The translations under genes were made by a program, and so were the position numbers. DNA of 63,976 nt, counting the filler, from Octopus bimaculoides (Eukaryota): NCBI RefSeq assembly GCF_001194135.2. It is 8 parts of 8 records of this genome, joined end to end, with 100 filler letters (N's around TTAATTAATTAA, not from the genome) between each part and the next. Parts side by side here need not be neighbours in the genome. Positions count along the whole stretch, not along the records: positions 11,718 to 36,068 come from NC_068988.1; 7 more parts are not named here. The stretch is one strand, 5' to 3'. How positions within the stretch are numbered: the stretch's first letter is position 1; each line of letters begins with the position of its first letter. The notes under the pieces are model-generated. The model searched no databases, was not told the origin of the DNA, and worked only from the letters and a program-made list of their open reading frames with translations. Shown here one piece after another: positions 12,913 to 34,805 of the stretch.

Positions 12913-12957
<45 letters not shown>

Positions 12958-13557: not shown

Positions 13558-14610
13558 ATGGACTCATCTGAATCAGGCACCAAAATATCAGAATCATATT
13601 CAGTTCATATAAGAATGGACGGCAACTCTCCAAAAACCGTAAGTGAGAGCACCTTCAATGAATACCTGGAGAAAATCAGACGTCTTGCAATTATAAGTTC
13701 TATTCCTTCTAAAATGAGTTTAGAAATGTGGAAAAGATCTGATATGAAAACACGAATTCTGTATTTATGTCTCCCTTTACTCTATCTAATCTCCACACTT
13801 GATATTTTACGCTTTATATGGTTTATTGTAGCAAGTTATACATCAAACAATAATAAAAGTATATTAGGGGAATCTTATATGCTCATGATGAAGATATTCC
13901 CAAGTATATTATCACTGATCGTTATCTGGAAACGCAATCACATCTACGGATTAATCGATGATTTTCAAACTTATATTCCAATATGCCCAAATAATATATT
14001 GATGAAACGGTACAACAAATTTGGAGCATGTACTGTTTTAATTAATATATATTGTTATTTTATCATAGCCGCTATATTCCAAATTATTTTACCGACAACT
14101 TTAGTTGATCCAGAATATTTTATGGAAGCGTTAGGATTTCCATTATCACGAGAAAATAAGTTTTTTGGGTTTATGTTGATATTAAATTTCTCGACAGATA
14201 TATGGAATGCAATCCTTATTTTGTCATCTGACAGATTATATGATGCATTAACATCAATATTCATAAAAGAATTTAATTATTTATCAGATAAACTTAAAGA
14301 GTCCATACAGGAAATTCAACATTCGAATAGAAGAATCTCTCAGAGACATATAAATCTTAATGAAATATTAACACAAATAATTAAGCAACATACTAGACTG
14401 AGTCATTTGACAAAAGGAATTAACTCGCTATTTCAGCATTTTAATGGGTTGATGGTATTAGTATTCAGTCTTAACTGGTGTATCATAGCATATGAAATAG
14501 CAAATAACTTAGTCAATCAGAAAGGCACCGTACTACAAATTGTTTCAGGAACAACGTCTGGACTATATTTTTTATATCTGATCTACAGAGGACTGGTGTT
14601 TAATTCGTCT
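13558..14610 (+). CDS. GRL/7TMIC-like chemoreceptor, large first exon (copy A1, 351 codons, TM1-TM6)
   Basis: Six hydrophobic segments and an IIKQHTRLSHLTKGINSLF loop motif before TM5, resembling the GR H..L......N..F motif. Ends YRGLVFNSS|gtaagt (phase-0 donor at 14611). Paralogous to five downstream copies. Confidence 0.75.
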
Positions 14611-14978
14611 GTAAGTATCTGTTTTCTGTATTTTTAATGCATAATTCATTGAAAACAAAGGTGTTATTTCCCGTCTATTTCCACGATCATCTCCATATCT
14701 GCTCACTTCGATTCCCCTTATAGCATCTCTTTATCCCTCTGTCTCGTTCATTGTTAGAGAATTAAGGGTTGTAAGTTCCGATCTTTCCACATATGTATGT
14801 ATGTATGTATGTATCTATGTATTTATGTATGTTTGTGTTTATGTATGCATGCATGTATTAATAAGTATGTAGAAGGTTGAAAAGTAACACAAGAGTTGAT
14901 ATATATATATATATATATATATANNNNNNNNNNNNNNNNNNNNNNNNNNNNNNNNNNNNNNNNNNNNNNNNNNNNNNN

Positions 14979-15400
14979 CAGAAAAAGTAATGGAGAGAAG
15001 GAAGTTCACTATTTTTTATTAATATATTAGTCATCTTCGCGTCTTACAGCCCTTTCAATTAATACACAATAATTTAATTACAAATTAGTGCTTTAACTTG
15101 CATTTCTGTGACATGACCATAATTCCATCAGAGAATAAAAAAAAAAAAAAAGATGTCACCTTGAGATGGTATATGTGGACCTAACAATTCATTTCAGCAG
15201 ACGGCTGAAATGAATTGTTAGGTTCACATATAACATCTCAAGGCTATTTCTTTTTTTTCCTCTAATGAAATTATGCTCATGTCACATAAATGAAAATATA
15301 ATGTATTAATTTGTAATTAAAGGGCTGTAAGAAGCGAAGATGATCAATTTGTTAATGATAAATAAATGTGAACTTCCTTATCTCCGTTAACAATTTGCTT
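14979..15400. mobile_element. Fold-back (palindromic) non-autonomous element
   Basis: About 200-bp imperfect inverted arms around a near-perfect hairpin centred near 15200 (ctaacaattcatttcagc-agacg-gctgaaatgaattgttag). Confidence 0.6.
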
Positions 15401-15401
15401 A

Positions 15402-15447
<46 letters not shown>

Positions 15448-15596
15448 TATTGATTTCAAATGTTTCTCACATCACAATTATGTATCCATTGCTCTTCAAA
15501 TCAACTCTTTGTGAACTCATTACTTTAAACTCTTGCTAATTCTATAAATGTTCATTAATAACTTGTGAAAAAATCATTACAGCATATTCGTTCCTT

Positions 15597-15612
15597 GGGT
15601 GTGCTTAACATT
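15597..15612 (+). promoter_or_regulatory. Conserved upstream motif of psiB0 (GGGTGTGCTTAACATT)
   Basis: 120 nt upstream of the ATG; resembles the A1/A2/B1 motif. Confidence 0.35.
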
Positions 15613-15716
15613 AAGTTATGAAAAGTTATATTTGTTCATGTATGATTTTTCGTCATGTAACTAATAGCATATCAGAGGGTCACTTTGTCATACATATTTT
15701 TATATTATTTTCTAAC

Positions 15717-16743
15717 ATGGAATCGTCATAATACTACTGGCGAAATATGTGTCTCTTTCAATATAAATACCGATCAATCTAAATCAAATGTAATAAAAAA
15801 TATTATATTCATTCCTGCTAAAAGTTAAACATCTTTCGCTTACAAGATTCTTTTCTCATGGGATAATTATAGAACAATGGAAAGATTATGGATTAAAGTG
15901 ACGAATAATTTATATTTTAATCCCATTTATGTATTCAATTTCTATGCTTAATATTATGTGCTTGCTTCGTTTATCATAATGATTTATTCTAAAGAAAACC
16001 TTGAGTCGCTCTTTGGGAAAAGCGTTCTTCTTTTGCTAAAGATATAACCATGTTTAATTTTCATAAATATGTTTTGAAACAGATCTCATACCTGCCAATT
16101 AATCCATGAATTCGGTAACCACATTCCTAGAAACCAAATTGCTCAAGATATGGCTATGTACCACACCTAGTGTACATGTTATGTCGTATATAACATATGT
16201 TATACTGTGGTGGCGATTGCTGAGATCCAGGTTGCTTTAAGTTTGACACTTGTAGATCCGGATTTCTTCTTTCATGTCATGGCTTTCCAGATATTACGTG
16301 AGAGCGAATTGATGTTAATTAGTTTAGTAATTAATGCATGATAAATTTATGGGTGACAAGTCTTATCATATCAAATTATATAGTACTCGTTGGATTTCTG
16401 TTAATTATGATAGATGAGTTTGAATATTTATCAAAGAAACTGCAGTATAATTTACCGGGTAAACAAGACGATCATACAAACATATCCCCCAACAAAAGTC
16501 CTTGCATTGATATATTGAATAAGATAATTAAGCAGCTAGGCAGACAATGTTGATTACATGAGATTATGAACAAAACATCTCATGTTACGGCCGCCATTAC
16601 ATTTCTCCTGTTTCGTCTTTGCACATGGAATCTCCAGTGTATTAATAAAATAAAAATGATATTTACTTCAAATGATTTTCGCAATGGGAATAGCATCAAG
16701 TTGTTTCCTGTTAATGTACAAAGATCTTCAGGTTAATTTGAAT
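15717..16743 (+). pseudogene. GRL-like exon pseudogene, subfamily B (psiB0)
   Basis: ATG at 15717. Interrupted translation aligns to B1/B2 (WKDYGLK*RIIYILI, LFGKSVLLLLKI*, LIHEFGNHIPRNQ, DEFEYLSKKL, LNKIIKQ, YKDLQVNLN) with stops and frameshifts. The donor position reads ATAAAT instead of GTAAGT. Confidence 0.75.
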
Positions 16744-17078
16744 ATAAATATTTGCTTTTCTAATTTGCTGCTTCGTTCGTAAGTGTTGTTTAAATCCAAA
16801 AATTCAGTATCATATTCGTTTACTGGTGTTAGTTGGAATGATATCTACACTTATTTGAAACCACCACGCCTAGCTAAGTTTTTTTCATTGAGCAAAGCAG
16901 CAAGTTAAAGTTATACTTGAAGTGTGTTTCTAATCAAAATATATTCTGGCAGCTTACACAAAGAGTGAAATACACTTCCGCCAAAACAACAAAACCTCAA
17001 AGACACACATGCTGCGCACAGCCAAAGCCATACAGATAAGCATACACATGCATATCAATATATGTGTTCGTATATGCA

Positions 17079-17126
<48 letters not shown>

Positions 17127-17422
17127 NNNNNNNNNNNNNNNNNNNNNNNNNNNNNNNNNNNNNNNNNNNNNNNNNNNNNNNNNNNNNNNNNNNNNNNNNN
17201 NNNNNNNNNNNNNNNNNNNNNNNNNNNNNNNNNNNNNNNNNNNNNNNNNNNNNNNNNNNNNNNNNNNNNNNNNNNNNNNNNNNNNNNNNNNNNNNNNNNN
17301 NNNNNNNNNNNNNNNNNNNNNNNNNNNNNNNNNNNNNNNNNNNNNNNNNNNNNNNNNNNNNNNNNNNNNNNNNNNNNNNNNNNNNNNNNNNNNNNNNNNN
17401 NNNNNNNNNNNNNNNNNNNNNN

Positions 17423-17458
<36 letters not shown>

Positions 17459-18421
17459 ATTATCCCGTCATTAAACGACGTATGAGGGGAGAACAATTTC
17501 TTACCGAACAGACACACAGATTACTTGTCTATAGTGATCAAATGTTTGTGTAGATATAAGCTCCATCCCTCCATTTGATCGACATTACCTGTACAGATGC
17601 AACTTGTGGCATATGTGTGTGCGTGAGTGTGTATTGGTGTGTGTGTGTGAGCGAGAGAGAGAATGTGTGTATGGCTCACAATTGAAGTTGTATTTGGATA
17701 TTGTGATTAAGGTGCAAGTTTCGAGCACTTGTCTGTAACTTTTTTGTTTTTCTCCTGGATTTGTAAAAGTAATATGCCAACATCTCTAGACTCTTTTCCT
17801 CATAGCTATCCTACATTCTCAAAATTATACGGGTAACTTCAAACATTTTCATTCAATATATAATGTTGTTACATTTTGTGTACATTATTAGCGAATTAAA
17901 ACTCAAAAGAGAAAGTGAGAGACCTTGCAAATGAAAATGGAATACTCTGCACTGAATGCAATGAATATTTAAATTTGCGATGAATTGGACGCAGTGAATA
18001 TTTAGATTTGCGAGAAATTGGAGTTTAAAAAATTCAATAAACTTGAGAAATCCAAATTATAAAAATTTCTTAGAACATGAATTTATAAAAATATTTCCAG
18101 ACGGTCAACTCTTTAATAACATCTTTCTCTTAGTACTTTTAGTAATTGTTACATACGTAATTAGTAAGCGTCTTTCTCCGTTTTATATACATATATATAT
18201 ATGTAAATATATATATATTTATATTTATATATATAATCTATCTTCGTCTGTTATATATATATATATNNNNNNNNNNNNNNNNNNNNNNNNNNNNNNNNNN
18301 NNNNNNNNNNNNNNNNNNNNNNNNNNNNNNNNNNNNNNNNNNNNNNNNNNNNNNNNNNNNNNNNNNNNNNNNNNNNNNNNNNNNNNNNNNNNNNNNNNNN
18401 NNNNNNNNNNNNNNNNNNNNN

Positions 18422-18720
18422 AGAAAGGAAAATGCACAGAGTTTACGTAGTTTTAGTATATTTTCAAATGAAAGAGTGTTGTCGTTGTCGACCGGTTTCG
18501 CTTTTGGTAATCATGATTTTGAAATTATTGTAATTTCGTATTTTCTCAGGGTTTAATCTATTTTTCTTTCATAGAAGAACATAGACTAAAATATTTTAAA
18601 GAAATATGAAATTACAATAATTTCAATGACATTAACGAAAGCGAAACGGTTTGACAACCACAATATACTTTCATTTAAAATATATTAAAACTATGAAAAC
18701 TGTGCATTTTCCACTTTTGT
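18422..18720. mobile_element. Fold-back (palindromic) non-autonomous element
   Basis: ggaaaatgcacag..tttcgc..gaaattattgtaatttc mirrored by gaaattacaataatttc..gcgaaac..ctgtgcatttttcc. Confidence 0.6.
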
Positions 18721-19939
18721 TTTTATAGACAAATTAGAAACTTGTGTATAGACATATTAGAAACGTGAAATAAATGAAACATATGAAGCATCAAGTAAAG
18801 TATATATACGTATGTATTAGCAAAGAAAAGAAATGTAGACATCGTCAGATAGACCATCAATTTATTAACTTCAATTTCGAACAAAAATCAATCTTATAAC
18901 CTACAATTAATTTAAAATACAAGTACATTTTCAATATTGTAAATTGAGTATTCCCCCCGTGTTAGAAATCACCATAAAAAAGATTCACATCGTAAAAGAT
19001 TGAGTGATCATTTGCAGAATTAGCATATCTACAGACAATGCATGAAGCGCGTGTGCATGTTAATGTTTTTAAACAAATACCATTACTTGTATATATGCAA
19101 TTTATACCTATACATATATATATATTTATATATATATGTATATAGACATATACATAAATGTATGTATATATGTATATATATATATATATATNNNNNNNNN
19201 NNNNNNNNNNNNNNNNNNNNNNNNNNNNNNNNNNNNNNNNNNNNNNNNNNNNNNNNNNNNNNNNNNNNNNNNNNNNNNNNNNNNNNNNNNNNNNNNNNNN
19301 NNNNNNNNNNNNNNNNNNNNNNNNNNNNNNNNNNNNNNNNNNNNNNNNNNNNNNNNNNNNNNNNNNNNNNNNNNNNNNNNNNNNNNNNNNNNNNNNNNNN
19401 NNNNNNNNNNNNNNNNNNNNNNNNNNNNNNNNNNNNNNNNNNNNNNNNNNNNNNNNNNNNNNNNNNNNNNNNNNNNNNNNNNNNNNNNNNNNNNNNNNNN
19501 NNNNNNNNNNNNNNNNNNNNNNNNNNNNNNNNNNNNNNNNNNNNNNNNNNNNNNNNNNNNNNNNNNNNNNNNNNNNNNNNNNNNNNNNNNNNNNNNNNNN
19601 NNNNNNNNNNNNNNNNNNNNNNNNNNNNNNNNNNNNNNNNNNNNNNNNNNNNNNNNNNNNNNNNNNNNNNNNNNNNNNNNNNNNNNNNNNNNNNNNNNNN
19701 NNNNNNNNNNNNNNNNNNNNNNNNNNNNNNNNNNNNNNNNNNNNNNNNNNNNNNNNNNNNNNNNNNNNNNNNNNNNNNNNNNNNNNNNNNNNNNNNNNNN
19801 NNNNNNNNNNNNNNNNNNNNNNNNNNNNNNNNNNNNNNNNNNNNNNNNNNNNNNNNNNNNNNNNNNNNNNATATATATATATATATATATATATAAATAT
19901 ATATATATTATTTATTTGAAGGTTACAATACATGTACTA

Positions 19940-20660: not shown

Positions 20661-21406
20661 CACCTTACTTCAGTTCTCTGCAGTCAGGTCAGCTCGCCAA
20701 ATCCTTTCATTTTGCGACGGACTGACGACCCTTTCAGTTACGGAATATATATACGTCATGAATCCGGGAAACCGACACTTGAGTGTCGGTAAGACTTAAC
20801 AAGGAAATTTTAAATGCTTCGTTTACTGAAAGAAACATAGTTGATAAGACAGGATATAAGGAAACAGATAATATCGATCCCACATTCAGGTTTACTTTAG
20901 AGTAAANNNNNNNNNNNNNNNNNNNNNNNNNNNNNNNNNNNNNNNNNNNNNNNNNNNNNNNNNNNNNNNNNNNNNNNNNNNNNNNNNNNNNNNNNNNNNN
21001 NNNNNNATATATATATATACATACACATATATATATACATACACTTATCGATATGCATTCATGCAGAACGAGAGGATGTAAAATGTTCAAACTTTGAGAT
21101 GATGCGTTTGTATGTGCGCATAGTTTTCTTGAACACCCCCCCCCACTTTTAAACGTTTGCGACGGACTATCGTCCCGCCCAATTAGGGTATGTATATAAA
21201 CCACGAAACCAGGAAACCGGACCTTTTCACTCAGTATGTTTGGAGAAACTTAACTACCTTTTCATTAGCTTAAAGTAACATGGATCATTTGACATAATAT
21301 AATCAATTAATAACAGATTATATCGATCCCACATTCAGGTTCCCTTCAGAGTAAGTAAAAGTTAATAGAAATGACTGCCTACATTGATTTTGTCACAATG
21401 AATAAA

Positions 21407-21422
21407 GGCGTGCTTATATTTT
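21407..21422 (+). promoter_or_regulatory. Conserved upstream motif of A2 (GGCGTGCTTATATTTT)
   Basis: 211 nt upstream of the ATG, inside a ~300-bp upstream block homologous to that of A1. Confidence 0.4.
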
Positions 21423-21617
21423 ATCATAATTATACATCCAGTCATATGTATTAATGAATGTAGTAGGGAGCTGTTCTCAAAACATTAGAAAAAATCAAAC
21501 TGGAATTGAGAAACATTAAATAAGAAAAACGCATATAAATATTCTGCTACTTTTGCATTCAGGTAAATTCAGTTTTTCTAATATCATATCAAGTTATATC
21601 AACAAACTAAGAAACTC

Positions 21618-22670
21618 ATGGAAGCATCTAAATTGGGCCCCAAAATTTCGGAATCACATTCAGTTCATATAAGAACGAGCAACAACTCTTCAAAAACCGT
21701 AAATGAGAGACCTTTGAAGGAATACCTGGAGAAACTGAAACGTCTTGCAATTGTATGTTCCATTCCTTCTAAAATGAGTTTAGAAATTTGGAAAAAATCT
21801 GATGTGAAAACACGAATTCTGTATTTATGCCTCCCTCTGATATATTTAATTTCCACGTTTGATATTTTACGTTTCATATGGTTTATGGTAGCAAGTTATA
21901 CATCAAAGAATACTGAATATATTTTGGAGAAAAGTTTTATGCTCATGGTGAAGATGTCCTCAAGTATATTAACACTGATCGTTACCTGGAAACGAACTCA
22001 AGCCAGCGCTTTAATCGATGATATTCAAACTTATATTCCGATATGCCCAAGTAATATATTAATGAAGAGGTACCGCAAATTTGGAGCAAGCAATATTTTG
22101 ATCAACGTATGTGTTAATTTTGTCATATCCGCTATATACCAAATTATTTTACCGTTAATTTTTACAGATCCGAAATATTTTCTGGAGGGCTTAACTTTTC
22201 CATTATCACGGCGGAATGGTTTTTTTGCGTTTATGTTAATAATAAATTTCTCGACAAGTATATGGAATTTTCTTCTTTTTCTGCCATTTGCGATATTATG
22301 CAATGCATTACCACCAATACTCATAGAAGAATTTAAATATTTATCAGAGACGCTTAGAAAATCCATAGAGGAACTTCAAGATTCCAATCGACAAATTTTT
22401 CGGAGAAGTATAAATCTCAATGAAAAATTAAATGAAATAATTAACCAACATACTAGACTGAGCCTATTGACAAAAGGCTTGAACTCGGTGTTTCAGTTTT
22501 GTAATGGCATGGTTGTATCACTCTTTCTTATTATCTGCTGTATTATCTCGTATGAAATAGCAAATGAATTAGTCTATCAGGAAGGCTACGTACTACAGGT
22601 TATTACGGCAATAATGGTTGCACTGTATTGCTTGTATCTGATATACAGAGGATTGGTGTTTAATTTGCAT
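21618..22670 (+). CDS. GRL/7TMIC-like chemoreceptor, large first exon (copy A2, 351 codons)
   Basis: Close paralog of A1 with identical exon length (1053 nt). Contains IINQHTRLSLLTKGLNSVF and ends YRGLVFNLH|gtaagt (phase-0 donor at 22671). Confidence 0.75.
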
Positions 22671-22955
22671 GTAAGTATCACTTTTCTGAATTTGTTATGA
22701 GAAATTCGTTCAAAACTGAGGGGTTATTTTGTCTTTATATATATATATTAGGGATAAAAATCCAAATTTACAGGTAAAAACTCAATTAAATTCAATTTAT
22801 TAAAAATTAAAATTAAATTAAGTTTCACAGTATAAAACATAAATATATGGTTTTAGAGAAAAGAACCAAGGTTCATGAACTCATCGATGAAAATCCACTG
22901 TCACATATAGAAAAATTAATAAGTAAAAGCACAATAAATAAGTATAATATAATAC

Positions 22956-23009
<54 letters not shown>

Positions 23010-23431
23010 NNNNNNNNNNNNNNNNNNNNNNNNNNNNNNNNNNNNNNNNNNNNNNNNNNNNNNNNNNNNNNNNNNNNNNNNNNNNNNNNNNNNNNNNNNN
23101 NNNNNNNNNNNNNNNNNNNNNNNNNNNNNNNNNNNNNNNNNNNNNNNNNNNNNNNNNNNNNNNNNNNNNNNNNNNNNNNNNNNNNNNNNNNNNNNNNNNN
23201 NNNNNNNNNNNNNNNNNNNNNNNNNNNNNNNNNNNNNNNNNNNNNNNNNNNNNNNNNNNNNNNNNNNNNNNNNNNNNNNNNNNNNNNNNNNNNNNNNNNN
23301 NNNNNNNNNNNNNNNNNNNNNNNNNNNNNNNNNNNNNNNNNNNNNNNNNNNNNNNNNNNNNNNNNNNNNNNNNNNNNNNNNNNNNNNNNNNNNNNNNNNN
23401 NNNNNNNNNNNNNNNNNNNNNNNNNNNNNNN

Positions 23432-23810
23432 ATGTTATATATATTTGTAAGTCCTGGTGTTTTTGTTATGTATTTGTCTGAATATTTTTTTTATTATACC
23501 TAAGGCACCTAGTATGATAGGAATTGTTTCTGTTTTTAGATTCCACATTCGAGTTATCTCTATTTCCAGGTCTTTGTATTTTGAAAGTTTTTCCATTTCT
23601 TTTAGAGAAACGTTGTCATCTTCTGGTATTGATACATCAATTAGAAAGCATTTTTTTTCTTCATGATCTTTGACAATTATATCTGGTCTATTTGCCTTAA
23701 TTTCTCTATCTGTGTGTATTGGCATATCCCAGAGTATGGTTGCTTTCTCGTTTTCTGTGACCTTTTCTGGCGTGTGTTTATACCATTCTCGTTTTCTGTG
23801 ACCTTTTCTG
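23432..23810 (-). mobile_element. Restriction-like-endonuclease (R4/Dong-type) non-LTR retrotransposon fragment
   Basis: IKANRPDIIVKDHEEKKCFLIDVSIPEDDNV..KE.EKLSKYKDL..EI.RMW....IPIILGALG: the PD..D and KY motifs of the RLE domain. Lies next to a (TAA)n tract. Confidence 0.8.
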
Positions 23811-24320
23811 GCGTTATTATTATTATTATTGTTATCATTATTATTATTATTATCTTATAATATTTACTTTGTATTATATTATACTTATTTATTGTGCTTT
23901 TACTTATTAATTTTCTATATGTGACTGGATTTTCATCGATGAGTTCATGAACCTTGGCTCTTTTCCCTAAAACTATATATATATANNNNNNNNNNNNNNN
24001 NNNNNNNNNNNNNNNNNNNNNNNNNNNNNNNNNNNNNNNNNNNNNNNNNNNNNNNNNNNNNNNNNNNNNNNNNNNNNNNNNNNNNNNNNNNNNNNNNNNN
24101 NNNNNNNNNNNNNNNNNNNNNNNNNNNNNNNNNNNNNNNNNNNNNNNNNNNNNNNNNNNNNNNNNNNNNNNNNNNNNNNNNNNNNNNNNNNNNNNNNNNN
24201 NNNNNNNNNNNNNNNNNNNNNNNNNNNNNNNNNNNNNNNNNNNNNNNNNNNNNNNNNNNNNNNNNNNNNNNNNNNNNNNNNNNNNNNNNNNNNNNNNNNN
24301 NNNNNNNNNNNNNNNNNNNN

Positions 24321-24360
<40 letters not shown>

Positions 24361-24364
<4 letters not shown>

Positions 24365-25065
24365 TCATCCCGGTAATTTTAGTTGATCCGGAATATTTTT
24401 GGGAGGTTTCAGCTTTTCCATTATCACAGCAGCATAAGTGTCTTGCGTTTATGTTAACAATTTTCTCGACAGATGTATGGAATTCTCACATTTATGTCAT
24501 CTGTGAGATAATGTGATGCATTAGGATTAATATATTTGGAAGAATCTAACTATTCATCAGAGACGCTTAGAAAGTCCATACAGGAAATTTAAGATTCGAA
24601 CAAGGATATCATTCAGATATCTATAAATCTCAATGAAAGATTAACTGAAACAATTAACTTATATACAAGACAGTCAATTCGTTTCCAGTCTAGTCACAAG
24701 GCCTGAAATTTTGTTGGGGAGGGGGGGGGCCAGTCGATTAGATCGACCCCAGTACGTAACTAGTACTTAATTTATCGACTCCGATAAAGACAGGCGAAAT
24801 ACCGCTAAGTATTTCGCTTGGCGTGCTAACGTTTCTGCCAGCTGACCGCCTTACAAGACTGAGGCAATTGGCAAAAGGCATAAACTCGGTATTTCGGTTT
24901 TGTAATGGCATGATTGAACTACTAGTCCTTATTTGCTGTATCATATATGAAATAGGAATTGATTCAATCAATCAGAAAGACTACCTACTACGAATGTTTG
25001 CGGAAGTAATTACCGCACTCTTCTGCTTATATCCGTTATACAGAGGATTTGAAGTCAATTCATCT
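24361..25065 (+). pseudogene. GRL-like exon pseudogene, subfamily A (psiA3), 3' half visible, SINE-disrupted
   Basis: Translates to ILVDPEYF..AFPLS, FSTDVWN, KGINSVFRFCNGMI, YRGFEVNSS, with frameshifts. A SINE piece (24672-24851) is flanked by the direct repeat TACAAGAC. The donor is degenerate (gtgtct). The 5' half is lost in or before the gap at 23987-24320. Confidence 0.75.
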
Positions 25066-25179
25066 GTGTCTGTTTTGTTTTTGTATTTCAAATGATTGTA
25101 AATTCAAATCATTTGGGTTCTGCAAAATATTTTCTATATAGAGATTCTCTCAATCTCATCTATTTGCTATCTTTTTTCC

Positions 25180-25210
<31 letters not shown>

Positions 25211-25448
25211 TGTATGTATGTATGTATGTATGTATGTATGTATGTATATGTATATACATACATATATACCCACACATTTTTAACCGAATATCTTACGGTT
25301 AAGCTGGTTCCCATGCATTTCTCTGAAGAGAAGATTACATTCTTATCAACATCACCTATTCCTATGGAAGGTATAATTTGTAATCTTCGAAACATATGTT
25401 GGAAATAAAGGAATTCATTTAACATATGCGGTTTACTCCATTTACTAA

Positions 25449-25497
<49 letters not shown>

Positions 25498-25619
25498 TAT
25501 TTACATCCATATGAATATCCTCAAACACGAACACATACATACAAAATGTTACGGCTATACTGGACGTTATTTATGTCTCCATTCATCAGGAAGAGCTTGA
25601 TGTATTAGTGAACAGTCAA

Positions 25620-26330
25620 CGACATTGGAGAGCTAAGTAATTACGTTATTGTTTAGGAAAAGTTAGTGGATCTGGCGAACTGGAAGCTAACTTATTGGAA
25701 ACGACTTACATGATAATTCACGCCTGGTATTAAAATGCCGGCATCTCGACTTTTAGTAAATATCCAGTGTACAAGCTGCAAGGCATCAAATGGACAGAGG
25801 TACCGTTTAGAATGAAACAGTTTGGAGTGTGATTTAGGGCCACCGCAGACGTCTGTACACGCAGAGTTTATACTCCAACGGTGAACAGAGCCTTAGACTA
25901 AATTCAGACGGTTATGCGAAGATGCCAGACATGATAGTGAATTTGCTGTTGGAGAGGGTTGCTGTTGGATGGCTATATGTGTTTGCCGTAATTCCTGAAA
26001 GAGCTAGAAGTCGACGAATTTCTTCGACTTCAGCAGAACGTATTTCTGTCCTCTTACTTGCACCAATTTCTGGCTTCCTAATTCTGGTCACCAATATCTA
26101 GCGCTCTAATTGCACCTGAATTATTAATTGTGGTGCGAGATTGAAAAAGACACCGACCGGTTTGCCTGCACAACACCAACGCCAAGCCAGAGGCCAGGAT
26201 CAAGGATATGTTCGAACATCTTTCGAGAGAAACATTGAGGAACGCATGCGCCTGGTTCTAGAATCATCGCAAGACCATCGTGGAAACTGGGAGAGACTAC
26301 GCAGAGTAAGCTATTATCTCCCATTCTTTT
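25620..26330 (+). mobile_element. Highly degenerate LINE (probably RTE) endonuclease remnant
   Basis: Relatively GC-rich island with VYTPT (cf. VYAPT) and downstream APE-like remnants; many stops. Confidence 0.35.
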
Positions 26331-27992
26331 AAAAGTGCTGTAGGTTTGGATGGGATATTATGTTCTTCCCCTGTTTATGCAAACTGTGATATTTTTATCG
26401 AGCACCGGTATAGATATATAGAAAGATCGATCAATACATAAATATAAAGATAAGTAGATAGATGGATAGATAGATAGATAGATAGATAGATAGGTAGATA
26501 GAGAGATAGATAGATACATACATAGACAAACAGAGAATCAGACAGATAAATATATATATATACATACATGTTTGTAGAAATATTGATGCTTGTTATATAA
26601 ATGTTTTTTATTATATGTGTATACATGTACCTCCGTGTATGAAATTGCTTTTAATCATATTTGAACAGAAGTGATATTTTTATATATTGATGGGCAGAAT
26701 ACACTAATGCTTCTTTTATGAAATCGTAACCTGGGCAAATAGCATTGATTTCATATATGTTTTTCACATCACAATTATGTATCCATTACTCTTCAAACCA
26801 ACTCTTTGTGAACTCATTACATTCAACGCTTGCTAATTCTCTAAGTGTCCATTACTAACATTAGCAGAAAGAAAGCCCACCGGGCGGTTTTCTGTTGATC
26901 TATATATATATATATATTCCAAAGTAGCAAACAGAAACCAACACAGAGGAAAACAAACATATATATATCCAGACAAGTTTCCAACTCTTCTGGTGCTTCA
27001 TATTTTATGCTTGGTTAGTTGAACGAAATTGACGAGAAAATTTTTGTCCAGATGGTAAAGCAATCCGGATGCTTATTCTTATAAATTTCAGCTCAAAGTT
27101 AAATAATATCATTAGAACAGGAGGAGAACACATAATGTCATGTGATTATAACGAAATTAACCCACTTTTAGTGAGAATTTTAAATGCCATACAACCTCAG
27201 TTTGTAACTATCACTTTCCTGAAAGTGCCCATAGCATTGAATGCATAACAAAAATGCAAGCTGAAAAATATATGTGCTGTGTACGTCTCATTCAAATTTC
27301 CTCTTACTTTCTATTTTCGAGCTGTTCGGCTGATAGATTTTCGTATCCTGGCGTATAAAATGTTTCGACATAAAGTGATAATTCGTTTAAATTACATGCG
27401 CTCGAGGAGAATAGATTTTACTGTTCATATTATTTCGACAACCGATAGTACCTTACATGGAAAGAAATCAGCACATATTCATAATATCACATACCCACAG
27501 AACGTCACGGATAAAACAAAACAATTTTTTCTCGTGTATTCCATGAGCAGCAAATAATAAATTCTAGAATGGGCAAATTTCAGTCGAAGGTGTAATAGAA
27601 TTATGTCACAAATAATCTCTGTATATCCGAGAATATTTCTTCAAGTATAAACAAGCAAAAAACTAGTTTACCTCTAGTTTAAGATAGAAAGGAATTCTTC
27701 TGCAAGAGATAAACGCACGAAGACATTAGTCCATCGATGAAGTAGCGTCATGTTTACCCATTAGTAGATAAAAGGCCTATGTCATACTTATTTGTAGAAA
27801 ATAAATGCATATTCAAGATCATGTATAGGCGTATGTACAATGAGTGTATCTTTGTATTCTGTGTGATAATATAGACAGGTTGAAAAATATTTCACTTGAT
27901 AATTAATTACATATGACCTAGCTACTCGTTGTAAATAAAACATCAAATATCCCAATGATGAAATGCTGCTACACAATAGAAATCATCCGTTT

Positions 27993-28008
27993 GGGTGTTG
28001 CTTATATT
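27993..28008 (+). promoter_or_regulatory. Conserved upstream motif of B1 (GGGTGTTGCTTATATT)
   Basis: 238 nt upstream of the ATG; resembles the motifs of the other copies. Confidence 0.35.
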
Positions 28009-28230
28009 AAATGTAATATGACTTAGCTAGAAAGTAAATATTTTAGTGTATTTACCCGTTGAGTGAGTTTTTAATTGACTACGAGGAGAATTAATAATTA
28101 ATTACTTCGTATAAATAATACAAATATTGTAGTCTGACGAGTGATACTGTCTATCGTACCGACGCAACAGACTAAATGTAGGTGAACAGGAGTGTGCAAG
28201 AAATTTATTTTGTCCATATGCAACTTTGTA

Positions 28231-29313
28231 ATGGCTTTGCAGTCTTTACCAACACTTCTTTCAAGTAAGGAATCAGCTCATACGTTTAACGATATGTATG
28301 AATCATTTTATATAAATATCGAGGAGTATCGATCAAAGACACTAAAAGAAACAGTTCTAAGTTCGTTTCTGAAGAAACTTAAACACATTTCTATTTTGTA
28401 CAGCTTTCCGTCAACAATGAATATAAAAATTTGGAAAACGTCTGGATTGAAAACATGGATTTATTTTATTTTGCTCTTTCTGCTGTATTTTATTCTCATA
28501 ATAGAAATTATACGATTTCCATACTTCATTTTGGTAAATTATTCAATTGAAGATGCTGAACCGCTATTAGCGAAAAGTTTTCTTTTATTATTGAAGATGG
28601 TTACTGCTATGATTGCGATAAATGTAGTTTGGAACAGGCAAACAATAAATCAATTGTTGAGAGACTTAAGTGATTATATTCCAGTAAACCAAGATGCTGA
28701 GTATATGGCAAGGTGTAACGAAAGAGGAATGTGTTATATCAAAACTAATATATGTTCTGTGGGTTTGCTATCTATTTCACTCCAAATAATTTTACCACTT
28801 GTTTTGGTTGATCCGCATTATTATCTAGATGTCTTTGCTTTCCCAGGATCCCGTGAGAATAAGTATTTTGTATTTGTTTTAGTACTAAATTGTATGACAA
28901 ATATGTTGGCTTACATGCTTTCATCGCCTGTTCAATCCATGTCCGGTATTACTCTGCTACTTATAAAAGATGAGTTTCAATGTTTGTCAGAGAAACTTCG
29001 AAATGTTTTTCGGAAAATGCGAAGTGAACAGACACGAGTATTTCTAACGCGTACAGACTGCAATAAAATTTTATATCAGATAATAGACCAGCATGGGAAT
29101 ATTTGTGAATTACTAAAAGCTTTAAACGCAGTAAATCAAGCTGGATGTACACTTACTGTAATATTGGTCGCTATTCAATGCTGTTTTATAACATATGAAT
29201 TAGCAAACGGCTCAGTTAGCTCCAAAGTCTACGGGATTCAATCGATATTTGGAATATGTGCAGTAGTGGTGGTTTTGCTGGTGATATATAATGCTCTACA
29301 AATTAATTACTGC
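28231..29313 (+). CDS. GRL/7TMIC-like chemoreceptor, large first exon (copy B1, 361 codons)
   Basis: ATG at 28231 (MALQSL) aligns with the B2 start. Six TM segments and IIDQHGNICELLKALNAV. Ends YNALQINYC|gtaagt (phase-0 donor at 29314). Confidence 0.75.
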
Positions 29314-29344
29314 GTAAGTATTATATTTATTATTTTCCCTTAGC

Positions 29345-31179
29345 TGTTCTTTCATTTCTTTCTCCATGATTTCATTGAACTCTAGTATACCAAGTTATTT
29401 ATAACCTTCCTTTTCGACTTGTTTAATCGCTTCTCCATTAAGTAATTTTATCCTCGCTAGGAACAGTACCTTACCTCTTTTCAGGTTTCTTATACCGCAC
29501 CTCTTGAGTCCGATTTCCATCTTGATATCAGTACTAATCTAGTGGACTATATTCCCCAAAGCACTCACTTGTGCCTCATCCTTGCCATACAGCTTCAAAT
29601 CATCCATGAAGCGGAGATGTTTGATTCTTTGAGATTTTCCCTATCTCATGTTCCTTTTCTTCAGCGCCAAGGTCAGAGGAATCCTACAAAGAAAAAAATA
29701 GTAATGGTGATAAGTTATCTCATGGGAAAATCCTTCATCTGATATCCAGGCTGTCCAAGCTTTGTACGTACGGTGTACATCCCCACCATACTTCACTTCA
29801 GAAAATACGTTTTATGCCTTGCACTTCCAACAATCCTAAGCACTCGGCGTTCCAGGAATGTGGAATCGTATCAAGATTTGCGGTAGTTAATCTAATCCAT
29901 TCTCAGATTTGTCCTCCTTCGGTTACGCTCATGCATTACAATTTTGTTTATCAATAATTAGTGTCCAATACTTATGCATCCCTTCTAGCAACCCTTTTGT
30001 TTCATCGCTAAGGTGTCGTCAACATCAAGAAATTTGTACATTCCTTCTGCAATCCCTCCTGATAGTAACTTCCACGTCAATGGAAGGTAAGAAATCGGCT
30101 TGTCATTGTCGGCAGCATTTCCTTTCAATGTACACTTCATGCACAACGCTGTTCGTCTTTCGGTCAACCACTCCGGGATTTTCTCTTCTCCATGTGCGAT
30201 CATGGCACCACCTGAACATTGTTATCCAAAATCCCTGCACACCATCAGGTCCTGCTGCCCTGCAGTTGCTCATCTTTTTGCTCATATTTCTGATACTGTA
30301 TTCGGTAAAGTGGGGTAGATCCTTGCTGGGATAAACGTCAGGCTACAGAGCCATTTATCTCCAGAATTGTGTTGTATTTGCTTACTCCATATATCACTCC
30401 AAAACTGTTGACTTTCATCAGCAGTAGGGATTAATCTTTTGCTTTCTATATCACCCTTAATTATGATAAAATGCTTTTTGGTCGATTCTAAACAATCGTT
30501 TTGTCGGTTTTGTTTAATCTGTAGTTCAAACATAGCTAGCTTTGCTTCTTGGCAAGTATGCGCTGCTCCACTCCTCCAACTACAACATTTCGTCCTTTTT
30601 TTTTATCAACAGCATACTTTTCCAATTTTTCAAATTTGCGATCATTCTTCATTTCTCGTCTTCTTCATTTTCCCTGTCAAGTTACTGCTCCTCCGACAGC
30701 TTATATCTCCTGAGATTCTTTTCCGCCAAGATTTTCTTTATTTCCTTCTCTTTCTGTCAACGTTCTGTTCGCATTCGTCTTCAGTACCAGACTTTCTGTC
30801 ACAAACTTATTTGAAGCCTTGATGACTCTCTTACTCTTTTACTCTTTTACTTGTTGCAGTCATTTGACTGTGGCCATGCTGGAGCACCGCCTTTAGTCAA
30901 GCAAATCGACCCCAGGACTTATTCTTTGTAAGCCTAGTACTTATTCTATCGGTCTCTTTTTGCCGAANNNNNNNNNNAATCGACCCCAGGACTTATTCTT
31001 TGTAAGCCTAGTACTTATTCTATCGGTCTCTTTTTGCCGAACCGCTAAGTTAGGGGGACGTAAACACACCAGCATCGGTTGTCAAGCGATGATGGGGGGA
31101 CAAACACAGACACAGACACACGCACAAACACACGCACAAACACACGCACAAACACACGCACATAGACACATACACACAA

Positions 31180-31218
<39 letters not shown>

Positions 31219-31800
31219 CACATATATACGACAGGCTTGTTTCAGTTTCCGTCTACCAAATCCACTCACAAGGCTTTGGTCGGCCCGAGGACACTTGCCC
31301 AAGGTGCCACGCAGTGGGACTGAATGTGGTTCGTAAGCAAGCTACTTACACACAGCCACTCCTACGTCTGAGTTTATCTGTTTGTGTGATATTCTTAATT
31401 TCAACGTACTTGAATACATTATTGACTCTACTTGTCTCTTGATTTAGTCTCCATTTGTCACCTTTCTTGAAGTCGCATATAAATTTTGTCTCCTCTGCAT
31501 TTACTAGAACCAAAATTCAGCTCATTACTATCTGGTCTCGACTCTCGCACAACTCGCGGCAATATATACTTCTTGGCAATTATCCATTTCTTCTATTGCG
31601 CAACTTCCGTTTCTCGTATGACCAGCATTACTTGATATCCTTCTTTTGATGGTTTCTAACTCCACTTCTGATAACCATCCATTCGTCCGTATTCCTCTTT
31701 TTACTGCTACTTAAAGCGGTAATGGCTTCATCGATAGTGTTATTAGAAGGGAAGCTATATTTTTTATAGTGAGAGGAAGAACACTTAATGGAGTCTGCAT
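29345..31800 (-). mobile_element. Degenerate R4/Dong-like non-LTR retrotransposon, interrupted by SINEs at ~30840-31370
   Basis: Minus-strand fragments NGWLSEVELETIKRR, IPTADESQQFWSDIWS, AAGPDGVQGFWI, PEWLTERRT..KPISYLPLTWKLLSG..QKGC and HLRFMDDLKLYGKDE. The 5' end abuts a (TAA)n tract. Confidence 0.75.
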
Positions 31801-31831
31801 TCTAAATATCATCATAATCATTATCCTCATC

Positions 31832-31872
<41 letters not shown>

Positions 31873-32471
31873 GGTTATTGATTGATTGATTGATTGATTG
31901 GTTGAGAGATAGCGCATGCCATCAAAGTGATACTAGGATACAAGTATACGAAACCCAATATATCCATCATGACTACGCGTCTGAAATGTGTACACCAGGT
32001 ACATGCATCTCAAAATGGTGATCTCATAGGACGAACGGCGCATGACCTCGCAGGTGGATCCCAGGTAAAATGAGGCCCATCCTGATCAAAAGGTTCCTGA
32101 ATAAGGTTTGTCAAAGGGTGATGCGGAAAACACCTACGTTACCAGAGGTGAATTATTATGAAACCCCAAACTACTCCTCTGAACACATGGCTACGTCTGC
32201 CTACGTCTGCCTACGTCTGCCTACGTCTGCCTATGTCTGCCTACGCCTGCCTACGCCTGCCCATGATCAGAGATGCACATATCGTCAGCCACCAAGGGAC
32301 ATGCTCAACTAGTTAAGGTAAAAAAAACTTACAAGCAAATCTCTGGTATTGAGCAGAATATTTGTTGTAGCCCATCTTTATACCAAGACAAAATAATGTA
32401 CATGATAACACTTCCAATCAGGTAAGCTCACAACCCATGGGAGCCACTACCTGGTACTGCATCAGGACATA

Positions 32472-32534
<63 letters not shown>

Positions 32535-32803
32535 CATTATCATCATCATCATTATTATTATTATTTTATGTTTGACTTTTGCTTTGCATTTGTACAAGTT
32601 AGATCCAAGTCTCACCCAGAGACCTCAAGAGACAACAAGTTAGAAGTTCATGTAGGTGTTATGCCTAGGGTACCATATATTTGGATTTGTACAGTTTTGT
32701 TCAAGTGAATGTTTAAGAAACCATAAGAAAATTATGTGTTTGCTTTAAAATTTGAGATCACATAGACAGTATTTTACGTAGGATATGGGCAGTTCCCATG
32801 AGC

Positions 32804-32869
<66 letters not shown>

Positions 32870-33554
32870 GTCAGTGAGCTGGCAGAATGGTTAGCACACC
32901 GGCATTTCGTCCGTCTTTATTATCTGATTTCAAATCCCGCGCAGATGACTTTCACTTTCATTCTTTCGATCTCTATCAATTACGTTCTAGCAAAACACTG
33001 GGGTTGATGCAATTGACTACACCCGTCACATTTCAGGCCTTGTGCGTTTAGTAGAAAACATTATTATTATTATCATCACGAATAATGATACATTTATTAC
33101 TGCATCCATTATTTAGACAAAGTAGCTGACTGGCATGTACATCGCCACATTAATGTGGCTTTTGTTCTTACTTTCACAGTTATAATTAACAATATTTCTA
33201 AGCTAAGATTTGGTTTTAGTATTAGTTTCTTCACAATATTTATTTCGCAGTCGATAAAATTTTCAGGATTTGGATGCAATGATATCGTCATATACGACCG
33301 TCAGCTTGTGTATTTATATGCCTATGTATTTGTGCATAAAAAATTATATTATTAGGCTGCAGGAAATATGGCTAATGTATTACTGCGATAGGCATTTTCC
33401 CTTACTTTTCTCTGCTCGTATAACCTATAGCCAACTTAATACACGGTGAAAGTCATTAGAGAACATCAGCTAATGAATTGATAATAAAAAACTCCAGATG
33501 AATTATGGGTTTATATACAATCAACAAACTAATGAGATATTGTATTTACCATCT

Positions 33555-33570
33555 GGGCGTGGATTTCTTT
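33555..33570 (+). promoter_or_regulatory. Upstream KLF/Sp-like box of B2 (GGGCGTGGATTTCTTT)
   Basis: 165 nt upstream of the ATG; only the GGGCGTGG core is shared. Confidence 0.3.
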
Positions 33571-33719
33571 ACTGCATGAAAACGTATTATGTATTGATTA
33601 TAAATGTTATAGCTAGTGTTCGCAGATGTAAATTATGAACTCTCCTTCAGACACAGAAATCAAAACTCGATCTCGCTGCGATTGTGCGTTATATTCACTA
33701 TTTGCTTCCAAAATATGTA

Positions 33720-34805
33720 ATGACTCTTAGAAATCTTTATCCACAGTTTTCTTCAAACATGGAATCACTTCATTCAGTCTTCGACACATATCAGTCAGTG
33801 GAGATAGGTATGGACAGCTATCAGTCAAAAGCTATAAAACACACTGTTTTTAATTCATTCCTGGAGAAAATTCGGTGGTTTACAATTTTATGTAGGTTTC
33901 CTTCTGAAATGAATATAAAAACTTGGAAATCATCAGGAGTAAAAGAACGAATTTTGTACTGTATCCTTTTATTGCTCTACATTATTATTATAAGCGAAAT
34001 TGTACGTTTTCCTTGGTTTATTTTGGAAAATTATTCAACTGAAGATACTCGACCTCTATTAGCGAAAAGTTTTCTTCTATCTCTCAAATTCTTTCCCGGT
34101 ATGAATGCAATAAATATAATCTGGAACAGACAACTTTTCAATAAGTTAATACAAGAATTCGGTAGTTACATTCCGATGAACCAAAATACTGAATATATGG
34201 CTAAATACAAACAATTTGGAATGCTTTATATTAAAATTCAGATATGTTTAAGTCTGTTGATACCTTTTGTCGCCCAGGGTCTTTTACCAATTTTGTCAAA
34301 TAACGGGATTCGTTTCCTAGATGCTTTAGCATTTCCAGTATCAATTAAGAGCGAATTTTATGGATATGTTGTGGCATTAAACTGCATGACAAGTGTATTC
34401 ACTTATATACTGATAGCATCGAATAGCATACTCTTCTACATATCACTTTCTATTTTAAAAGATGAGTTTAAATTTTTGTCGGAGAAACTTGAAAACGTCT
34501 TTCAAAACATGCGCACTGAAAATACGGAATTATTTGTTGTGCGTACTAATTACAACAAAATATTATATCATATAATTAATCAGCATGGGATTCTTTGTGA
34601 CTTGCTCAAATCTATCAATGGAATATCTCAAAGTACATATACAGTTACATGGATATTTTTACTTTTTAATTGCTGTCTTATGGCATATGGAATAGCAAAT
34701 AACTTAGTAAAAGAACATGGATACATGATACAATTTATCTATGGTATAATAGCGATTGTATACTGTTTGCCGGCAATACATAAAGGTCTACAGCTAAATT
34801 TCCAT
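33720..34805 (+). CDS. GRL/7TMIC-like chemoreceptor, large first exon (copy B2, 362 codons)
   Basis: ATG at 33720 (MTLRNL). Six TM segments and IINQHGILCDLLKSINGI. Ends HKGLQLNFH|gtaaga (phase-0 donor at 34806). Confidence 0.75.

What the first reader, a model, noticed from the sequence alone, without database searches (positions are those of the whole stretch)
13558..34805. Candidate protocadherin/UGT1-style variable-exon cluster of chemoreceptors: six tandem large first exons ending at the same splice donor, with no private last exon
Seen in sequence: four intact paralogs, each with an ATG and a 351-362-codon exon encoding six TMs. Each ends at the homologous position in a phase-0 donor (14611 gtaagt, 22671 gtaagt, 29314 gtaagt, 34806 gtaaga), kept even though subfamilies A and B are strongly diverged. 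Unspliced reading stops 5-9 codons later. The B1-B2 spacer (29314-33719) has only a 10-N gap and is almost entirely LINE/SINE/microsatellite; 24321-28230 is gap-free. I found no TM7-encoding exon in either. Established: GR/GRL genes carry conserved phase-0 introns near the C-terminus, and the last exons encode TM7 with the TYxxxxxQF motif that forms the pore and oligomer interface. Vertebrate clustered Pcdh and UGT1 loci splice many promoter-bearing variable exons onto shared constant exons. Inference: each variable exon (ligand-binding TM1-6) may splice over its neighbours to common downstream exon(s) encoding the pore helix, giving many receptors with one shared pore module. I know of no such architecture for GRL/7TMIC genes.
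Basis: partly seen in the sequence, partly recalled or inferred. Interest (0 to 1): 0.92.

Follow-up and report, generated by a model that had tools for sequence, protein, structure and literature searches.

The report
Octopus taste-receptor-like alternative-exon array
This is part of an octopus gene of the insect-type taste-receptor family in which several long alternative exons (four intact, two decayed) most likely each splice to shared small end exons lying outside the window, an arrangement already classical in insect taste-receptor genes.

Summary
There are six tandem + strand copies of a ~1.05-kb exon. Four are intact (A1, A2, B1, B2; 351-362 codons, own ATG, about six hydrophobic segments). 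Each ends at the homologous codon boundary in GTAAGT or GTAAGA. Two copies are pseudo-exons with degraded donors. The family is GR/GRL (Pfam 7tm_6/7tm_7).

No TM7-tail exon lies in the sequenced window. A tail HMM that finds all three tail exons in an Octopus sinensis control locus scores nothing here.

Shared-tail splicing is well supported, but indirectly:
- O. sinensis LOC118764605 isoforms X1 and X2 carry different long exons and an identical 70-aa tail. The switch is at exactly this donor position, over a range above 105 kb.
- Neighbouring LOC118764606 has two long exons followed by three small phase-0 exons.
- A gap-free O. vulgaris stretch shows consecutive long exons with no tail between them.

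RNA evidence from the window's own species is almost nil. One read stops matching at the B1 donor.

Tandem long first exons spliced into three shared short final exons is the textbook layout of insect GR loci such as Gr39a, Gr28b and BgerGr60a-m. This is a new member of a known kind, of modest interest.

The parts
13558..14610 (+). Long alternative exon A1. Intact, 351 codons, own ATG, about 6 hydrophobic segments. Phase-0 donor TCT|GTAAGT at 14611.
   Evidence: Pfam 7tm_6 at 36.5 bits against a cut-off of 25.8. 61% identical to the long exon of O. sinensis LOC118764605 X1.
13097..13557 (+). Upstream flank of A1, co-duplicated with the A2 flank (21158-21617). Candidate 5' UTR or promoter region; function untested.
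   Evidence: blastn aligns 13097-14669 with 21158-22729 at 77% identity. A shared 'ttttgcattcag|gt' motif lies upstream of the ATG (about 54 nt in A2, about 65 nt in A1).
15742..16746 (+). Pseudo-exon psi1, a decayed copy of the D-type long exon. Multiple stops and frameshifts; donor lost (ATA|AATATT).
   Evidence: It is 48-62% identical, in three frames, to the intact D-type exon of O. vulgaris in L002.
21618..22670 (+). Long alternative exon A2. Intact, 351 codons. Phase-0 donor CAT|GTAAGT at 22671.
   Evidence: 64% amino-acid identity to A1 and 67% to O. sinensis X1. dN/dS against A1 is 0.61.
24358..25065 (+). Pseudo-exon psi2 (A-type). The 5' part is missing at gap 23986-24320. Two frame changes, an insertion at about 24677-24852, and a weakened donor TCT|GTGTCT.
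28231..29313 (+). Long alternative exon B1. Intact, 361 codons. Phase-0 donor TGC|GTAAGT at 29314.
   Evidence: Three sense-oriented RNA reads in run X25. One of them matches only 29251-29314 and then continues as unlike sequence. Small RNA contigs lie at 29058-29226 in X32 and X33.
33720..34805 (+). Long alternative exon B2. Intact, 362 codons. Phase-0 donor CAT|GTAAGA at 34806.
   Evidence: 47% amino-acid identity to B1, with dN/dS 0.43. No RNA reads in the runs sampled.
29314..33719 (+). B1-B2 spacer (intron sequence if B1 is spliced over B2). It has one 10-N gap and no TM7-tail exon.
   Evidence: Tail tblastn and tail HMM are negative. Microsatellites are present. A high-copy repeat begins at about 29342.

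Best explanation
The window is an internal segment of one large multi-isoform gene of the gustatory-receptor-like (GR/GRL, 7TMIC) family in an octopus. It is probably the counterpart of O. sinensis LOC118764605. The gene carries a tandem array of alternative long 5' exons. Each has its own start codon and encodes the N-terminus plus TM1-6. Each ends in a strong phase-0 donor at the first of the three ancestral C-terminal GR introns.

A transcript starting at one long exon is spliced over all downstream long exons to a shared set of small phase-0 exons. These encode TM7 with the TYxxxxxQ motif. There are three of them in the neighbouring locus. Here they lie beyond the 3' end of the piece.

The array evolves by exon duplication, divergence and decay. 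Four exons are intact and two are pseudo-exons that have also lost their donors.

Shown: the exons, their donors, family membership, the absence of tail exons in the window, and the shared-tail structure in congeners. Inferred: that the window's exons use one shared tail, and how one exon is chosen per transcript. By analogy with Gr28b the choice may be made by a separate promoter per exon; this was not tested.
For: (1) Anatomy in the window. Four intact paralogous exons end at the homologous codon in GTAAG. The two decayed copies have lost the donor. dN/dS is 0.43-0.61 although dS reaches about 1.2.

(2) Family. A1 hits 7tm_6. O. sinensis P0001 and P0004 hit 7tm_7 and 7tm_6, all above Pfam's cut-offs. 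The five best Foldseek PDB matches of the (poor) model are all insect OR/GR structures.

(3) No tail exon in the window. The tail HMM's best E is 0.92, against 4e-15, 2e-9 and 1e-8 for the three tail exons in control L001.

(4) O. sinensis LOC118764605 isoforms X1 and X2 differ over their long exon, and the whole proteins are 44% identical. They share an identical 70-aa tail beginning exactly where the window's exons end. Both gene ranges end at the same coordinate, more than 105 kb from the X1 exon.

(5) L001 holds O. sinensis LOC118764606. It has long exon E1 (10001-11002), paralogous long exon E2 (23267-24277), then three small phase-0 exons (27093-27161, 30166-30255, 37719-37784). E1 plus the three small exons rebuilds P0015 exactly, skipping E2. 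The O. bimaculoides protein A0A0L8FL56 joins the E2 orthologue (87% identical) to the orthologous tail.

(6) L002, a gap-free 23-kb stretch of O. vulgaris, holds two consecutive long exons, both with GTAAGT donors. It has no tail exon between or after them.

(7) One 150-nt sense RNA read of run X25 matches B1 only up to 29314 and then continues as unlike sequence. That fits splicing at 29313 to an exon starting with G. The 605 tail starts with Ala, codon GCN.

(8) The same architecture is established for insect GR/OR genes (PMC2204066; PMC6175461).
Against: No transcript of the window's organism was seen joining any of these donors to anything. RNA coverage was near zero in every run sampled, and the letters beyond the single B1 read's match were not shown.

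The constant exons are not in the window, so sharing is inferred.

The congeneric evidence consists of computational gene models (NCBI Gnomon, JGI), whose RNA support I could not inspect.

Seven N gaps in the A1-B1 part could not be bridged.

A1 and A2 are only 61-67% identical to the X1 exon, so orthology of the window with LOC118764605 is at the level of the locus and subfamily, not exon by exon.
Confidence: 0.8

Rival explanations
1. These are separate conventional genes. Each long exon has its own private set of small TM7 exons, hidden in the assembly gaps or interleaved further downstream.
For: Seven N gaps (55-679 N) lie between A1 and B1 and could not be bridged. Only 1.26 kb of sequence follows B2.
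Against: The B1-B2 spacer has only a 10-N gap and holds no tail exon. Stretch 24321-28230 is gap-free and also empty.

In the control locus the three tail exons spread over about 10.7 kb. All three would have to fall inside gaps that make up only 14-18% of each spacer, which by my estimate has a chance below 1% per spacer.

The gap-free O. vulgaris locus L002 shows long exons with no tail between them. The O. sinensis isoforms share an identical tail.
Confidence: 0.04
2. Only the long exon nearest the constant exons is used. The upstream copies in this window are duplicated exons that are not productively spliced. The shared tails in database proteins are artefacts of gene predictors chaining any lone long exon to the nearest tail.
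For: All congeneric evidence is from predicted models. Expression of the window's exons is barely detectable. Two of the six copies are already pseudo-exons.
Against: The four exons keep open frames of 351-362 codons and GTAAG donors despite synonymous divergence of up to about 1.2, with dN/dS 0.43-0.61. The copies that did decay lost both frame and donor. That pattern indicates selection on the exon and its donor together.

One read stops matching exactly at the B1 donor. The insect precedent has RNA-seq support for such splices (PMC6175461).
Confidence: 0.1
3. Each exon is a complete gene making a truncated six-TM protein from an unspliced transcript that ends 5-9 codons after the GTAAG.
For: Every exon has an in-frame stop within 5-9 codons of the donor. 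Database ORFs of 340-360 aa of this kind exist on Logan contigs.
Against: Those database ORFs come from short unspliced contigs, most likely genomic. TM7 carries the family's pore and motif region, and spliced homologues keep it with TYxxxxxQ. The donor is conserved in intact copies and lost in pseudo-copies. One B1 read diverges from the genome at the donor rather than reading through.
Confidence: 0.03

Closest known systems
Insect GR complex loci: Drosophila Gr39a (A-D), Gr28b (A-E), Gr23a; Blattella germanica Gr60a-m
   Same: The protein superfamily is the same (7tm_7/7tm_6). Both have tandem long exons, each with its own ATG and encoding TM1-6. Both have a donor at the first of three conserved C-terminal phase-0 introns. 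Both have three short shared final exons encoding TM7, seen here in O. sinensis L001. Pseudo-exons are interspersed among intact ones in both (PMC2204066; PMC6175461).
   Different: The host is a cephalopod mollusc, not an arthropod. The scale is much larger: spacers of 1-6 kb between copies and a range above 105 kb to the tail in O. sinensis, against a few kb in Drosophila. Splicing and separate promoters are shown experimentally for the fly genes and not here.
O. sinensis LOC118764605 (isoforms X1 and X2), with neighbours LOC118764606 and LOC118764607
   Same: These are the closest sequence relatives. A1 and A2 are 61-67% identical to the X1 long exon. The splice point is the same. Isoforms are already annotated with different long exons and an identical tail.
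   Different: It is another species, and exon-by-exon orthology is not clear. The window's B-type exons have no annotated counterpart. These are predicted models whose RNA support is unknown.
Vertebrate clustered protocadherin and UGT1A loci
   Same: Many large variable 5' exons are each joined in cis to shared constant 3' exons.
   Different: The protein families are unrelated. In Pcdh and UGT1 each variable exon is a true first exon with its own promoter, and Pcdh choice is stochastic through CTCF and enhancer looping. None of this was tested here. The relation is analogy only.

Membership tests
GR/GRL (7TMIC; Pfam 7tm_7 PF08395 / 7tm_6 PF02949) | Significant match to the family profile | tested here: met
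   A1 hits 7tm_6 at 36.5 bits (cut-off 25.8). The spliced O. sinensis homologues also pass: P0001 hits 7tm_7 at 33.8 bits, and P0004 hits 7tm_6 at 36.5 and 7tm_7 at 35.1. A2, B1 and B2 alone give no Pfam hit, but they are clear paralogues of A1 (tblastn E 1e-53 to 1e-147).
GR/GRL (7TMIC; Pfam 7tm_7 PF08395 / 7tm_6 PF02949) | C-terminal TM7 with the TYxxxxxQ(F) motif | not testable with these tools
   The tail is not in the window. In the spliced homologues the motif is present: TYSIVAYQ (605), TYVIVVLQ (606), TYILVVIQ (607) and TYSVVVIQF in Littorina.
GR/GRL (7TMIC; Pfam 7tm_7 PF08395 / 7tm_6 PF02949) | [quoted passage not shown] | tested here: met
   The first intron is met: phase-0 donors follow all four window exons. 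All three are phase 0 in O. sinensis L001, whose rebuilt coding sequence equals P0015. Positional homology with the insect introns was not aligned directly.
GR/GRL (7TMIC; Pfam 7tm_7 PF08395 / 7tm_6 PF02949) | Insect OR/GR fold | tested here: inconclusive
   The AlphaFold2 model of P0001 is poor (pLDDT 54.8, 8-sequence alignment). The five best Foldseek PDB hits are nonetheless all insect OR/GR structures: AgamOR28 (E 1.7e-4, TM 0.45-0.48), ApOR5-Orco, MhOR5 and Gr64a. A sequence search of the PDB gave nothing.
Gr39a/Gr28b-type alternatively spliced GR locus | Tandem long exons, each with its own ATG and TM1-6, ending in a donor at the homologous position | tested here: met
Gr39a/Gr28b-type alternatively spliced GR locus | No private C-terminal exons between the long exons | tested here: met
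   The tail HMM and tblastn are negative over all sequenced bases, with a positive control in L001. The N gaps are untested. The gap-free O. vulgaris stretch L002 shows the same.
Gr39a/Gr28b-type alternatively spliced GR locus | Shared short final exons encoding TM7 downstream of the array | not testable with these tools
   They lie outside the piece. They are present in O. sinensis: an identical tail in X1 and X2 and three small exons after two long exons in L001.
Gr39a/Gr28b-type alternatively spliced GR locus | Transcripts joining each long exon to the shared exons | tested here: inconclusive
   Coverage was near zero. One X25 read stops matching at the B1 donor. Nothing was seen at the A1, A2 or B2 donors.
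Protocadherin/UGT1-type variable-exon cluster | Each variable exon is a first exon with its own promoter | not tested
   About 460 nt upstream of A1 and A2 are co-duplicated at 77% identity, which fits neutral decay. Acceptor-like pyrimidine-CAG motifs lie upstream of some ATGs, so an upstream leader exon cannot be excluded.

The most novel reading that the evidence does not exclude
The octopus GRL locus may be a very large alternative-exon array, over 100 kb with perhaps a dozen or more long exons of at least four subfamilies (A to D). It could use promoter choice per exon to give individual sensory cells distinct receptors with one common pore helix. That would make it a Pcdh-like diversification system in a 7TMIC channel gene outside arthropods. 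It would imply that this gene layout is either ancestral to protostome GR/GRLs or evolved convergently in cephalopods.
Probability: 0.15. Interest if true: 0.6.

Novelty: new member of a known kind. Interest (0 to 1): 0.33.

Why it matters
My literature searches found no description of cephalopod GRL genes or their splicing.

If confirmed, this locus adds a set of GR-like channels to the cephalopod repertoire. It also shows that the 'many long exons, one shared TM7' layout known from insects exists in a mollusc, at more than ten times the genomic scale.

There is a practical point for annotation. These exons are unannotated in the window's species: no identical protein was found. They are likely to be missed or mis-chained by gene predictors, as the O. 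vulgaris and Littorina models suggest.

Tried and rejected
- RNA support. Eight read-laying runs on A1, A2, B1 and B2 used three raw RNA-seq runs (only about 6% of each is read) and several Logan RNA contig sets. Coverage was essentially zero and no junction was listed.
- Bridging the N gaps with contigs of four DNA runs. Every contig breaks at the flanking microsatellites.
- Laying the window species' RNA on the O. sinensis tail exon (L001).
- Fetching DNA of LOC118764605. P0027 and P0024 are not on record.
- Homology search with B1. No hit.
- Sequence search of the PDB with the family profile. Only noise.
- A weak tail-like HMM hit on the minus strand of L001 (4014-3841, E 0.05). On inspection it looks like chance.
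- Pfam on ORFs of the B1-B2 spacer, to verify a LINE. No reverse-transcriptase domain.
- Acceptor-like motifs upstream of the ATGs. They are inconsistent between exons, so no conclusion on leader exons.
Full report
**Observation.** The piece (11718-36068) carries four long open reading frames on the + strand:
- A1 13558-14610, 351 codons
- A2 21618-22670, 351 codons
- B1 28231-29313, 361 codons counted from the ATG
- B2 33720-34805, 362 codons

Each exon is followed at once by a consensus donor: TCT|GTAAGT, CAT|GTAAGT, TGC|GTAAGT and CAT|GTAAGA. All lie at a codon boundary, so all are phase 0. Read-through stops after 8, 9, 9 and 5 codons.

tblastn with the four proteins, and later with an O. 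vulgaris exon, finds two more copies.
- psi1 (15742-16746) is full of stops and frameshifts, and ATA|AATATT stands where the donor should be.
- psi2 (24358-25065) has its 5' part missing at a gap. It has two frame changes, a ~176-nt insertion and a weakened donor, TCT|GTGTCT.

The pattern is not chance. The DNA is about 31% GC, so frames this long should not stay open. Nei-Gojobori dN/dS is 0.61 for A1-A2 and 0.43 for B1-B2. It is about 0.5 between the A and B subfamilies, where dS is 1.1-1.3. The intact copies keep GTAAG while both decayed copies have lost it. That indicates the donor is maintained together with the reading frame.

**Gaps.** N runs are at 14924-14978, 17127-17422, 18267-18421, 19192-19870, 20907-21006, 23010-23431, 23986-24320 and 30968-30977. 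The run at 23986-24320 was not in the program's note. None lies in or next to an intact exon, and only psi2 abuts one. All are flanked by TA/TATG microsatellites. Contigs of four DNA runs end at those repeats, so the gaps could not be closed.

**What the exons encode.**
- A1 matches Pfam 7tm_6 above its cut-off, covering profile positions 5-220 of 313. The C-terminal third of the domain is therefore missing.
- The nearest database protein is O. sinensis LOC118764605 isoform X1 (P0001, 421 aa, 61% identical to A1). It hits 7tm_7, and isoform X2 (P0004) hits both 7tm_6 and 7tm_7.
- Each exon has about six hydrophobic segments, and the 70-aa tail of P0001 adds one more.
- The AlphaFold2 model of P0001 was poor (pLDDT 54.8). 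Even so, its five best PDB matches are all insect odorant or gustatory receptors.

The family assignment to GR/GRL (7TMIC) is sound.

**Where is TM7?** It is not in the window. I searched with the tails of three O. sinensis loci and one Littorina protein. I also built an HMM from five tails. The HMM finds the three tail exons of a control locus at E 4e-15, 2e-9 and 1e-8. In the window its best score is E 0.92 on the wrong strand and E 3.6 on the + strand. The B1-B2 spacer (one 10-N gap) and stretch 24321-28230 (gap-free) are therefore truly empty of tail exons.

**Evidence from congeners.**

1. *LOC118764605.* X1 and X2 differ throughout their long exon, and the whole proteins are 44% identical. 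They end in an identical 70-aa tail (AHQLVDHIY...ITYSIVAYQTRS). In the alignment the switch falls exactly where the window's exons end. Both gene ranges end at the same coordinate, more than 105 kb from the X1 exon.
2. *LOC118764606.* I obtained 47.8 kb of O. sinensis DNA around it (L001). It holds long exon E1 (10001-11002, donor AAT|GTAAGT) and a paralogous long exon E2 (23267-24277, 43% identical, donor AAT|GCAAGT). Three small exons follow: 27093-27161, 30166-30255 and 37719-37784. Joining E1 to the three small exons reproduces the annotated protein P0015 exactly. All three introns are phase 0, and E1 is spliced over E2. The O. bimaculoides UniProt entry A0A0L8FL56, named 'Gustatory receptor', joins the orthologue of E2 (87% identical) to the orthologous tail. 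Between the two species' models, both long exons are attached to the same three small exons.
3. *O. vulgaris.* A gap-free 23-kb stretch (L002) holds the counterpart of the X2 exon (96% identical, with a frameshift, donor AGT|GTAAGT). An intact exon of a fourth subfamily lies 6.8 kb further on (349 codons, donor AAT|GTAAGT). No tail exon is found anywhere in it. This answers the worry that private tails hide in the window's gaps. The window's psi1 is a decayed copy of that fourth subfamily, which shows exon birth and death between species.

**RNA.** This is the weak point. In three raw RNA-seq runs of the window's species, only about 6% of each run is read by the tool. In those and in several assembled RNA runs the exons are almost silent.
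- Small RNA contigs lie inside A1 and B1.
- Run X25 gives three sense-oriented reads on B1.
- One 150-nt read matches only 29251-29314 and then continues for at least 20 letters unlike the genome.

That last read is what a read spliced at 29313 to an exon beginning with G would look like. The 605 tail begins with Ala, codon GCN. The tool did not print the unmatched letters, so this remains a single suggestive read. No junction was seen for A1, A2 or B2.

**Interpretation.** The best explanation (confidence about 0.8) is that the window is an internal part of one large GRL gene. Its alternative long exons are each spliced to a shared set of small TM7 exons that lie downstream of the piece. Three rivals were considered:
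- Private tails hidden in gaps. The empty gap-free spacers and L002 make this unlikely.
- Only the exon nearest the tail is used, and the shared tails are predictor artefacts. Long-term conservation of frame plus donor argues against this.
- Truncated six-TM proteins from unspliced RNA. The conserved donors and the diverging B1 read argue against this.

How one exon is chosen per transcript is unknown. About 460 nt upstream of A1 and A2 are co-duplicated at 77% identity, which is consistent with neutral decay. Acceptor-like motifs upstream of some ATGs leave open whether there is a leader exon.

**Comparison with what is known.** It is in fact the family's classical peculiarity.
- Drosophila Gr39a has four large exons, each encoding six TMs. 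[quoted passage not shown] Gr23a and Gr28b behave likewise (PMC2204066).
- Robertson et al. [quoted passage not shown] They report up to 13 isoforms (BgerGr60a-m), some of them pseudogenic. They also state that the three phase-0 introns are ancestral and present throughout GRLs (PMC6175461).

The octopus locus matches every one of these points. New here are the host, the scale and the lack of prior description:
- The host is a cephalopod.
- The span is above 105 kb, with spacers of several kb.
- I found no paper describing this for cephalopod or other mollusc GRLs.

NCBI's O. sinensis annotation already models it. Protocadherin and UGT1 are analogies, not relatives.

**Verdict.** This is a new member of a known kind, with interest about 0.33.

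Noticed in passing
L001:24266-24283 (O. sinensis LOC118764606, second long exon E2): E2 ends in AAT|GCAAGT, a GC donor instead of GT. NCBI annotates no isoform from it in O. sinensis, yet the O. bimaculoides model A0A0L8FL56 uses the orthologous exon. It is either a functional GC-AG intron or an exon recently disabled in O. sinensis.
   Followed up: partly
L002:10001-13065 (O. vulgaris CAI9727299.1, P0012): This 90-aa O. vulgaris model joins the end of the X2-type long exon, at the correct donor, to an unrelated 42-aa exon at 12937-13062 that lies between two long exons. It looks like a mis-prediction. The long exon itself carries a frameshift near 9620 in this assembly.
   Followed up: partly
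P0018 (Littorina saxatilis XP_070173750.1, 778 aa): This gastropod model chains the C-terminal part of one long exon, a long linker and a second complete long exon to one TM7 tail (TYSVVVIQF). That suggests tandem long exons, and predictor confusion, in a gastropod too.
   Followed up: no
window 13097-13557 and 21158-21617: About 460 nt upstream of A1 and A2 are homologous (77% over the whole 1.57-kb unit). They share a motif 'ttttgcattcag|gtRaat' upstream of the ATG (about 54 nt in A2, about 65 nt in A1) that could be read as a splice acceptor or a donor. B1 and B2 share no upstream similarity.
   Followed up: partly
window 21693-21835: Three X25 RNA reads, all second mates at the same place, 95-99% alike and only partly matching. 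They lie on A2 in the orientation opposite to the B1 reads. They may be duplicates from a near-identical paralogous exon elsewhere or from an antisense transcript.
   Followed up: no
window 24677-24852: A ~176-nt insertion interrupts pseudo-exon psi2. Its translation is G-rich and unrelated to the receptor, so it may be a SINE-like element.
   Followed up: no
window 29342-29390: Contig depth in DNA run X4 jumps from about 12 to about 325 just 30 nt after the B1 donor. A high-copy repeat therefore starts immediately inside the intron.
   Followed up: no
window 23986-24320: This 335-N assembly gap lies inside the finding's range but is not listed in the program's note. It removes the 5' half of psi2.
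   Followed up: yes
window 12800-13012 and 14788-14920: RNA reads pile up massively here, to hundreds or thousands deep. They sit on TG/TA/TATG microsatellites flanking A1 and come from repeats elsewhere, not from expression of the locus.
   Followed up: yes
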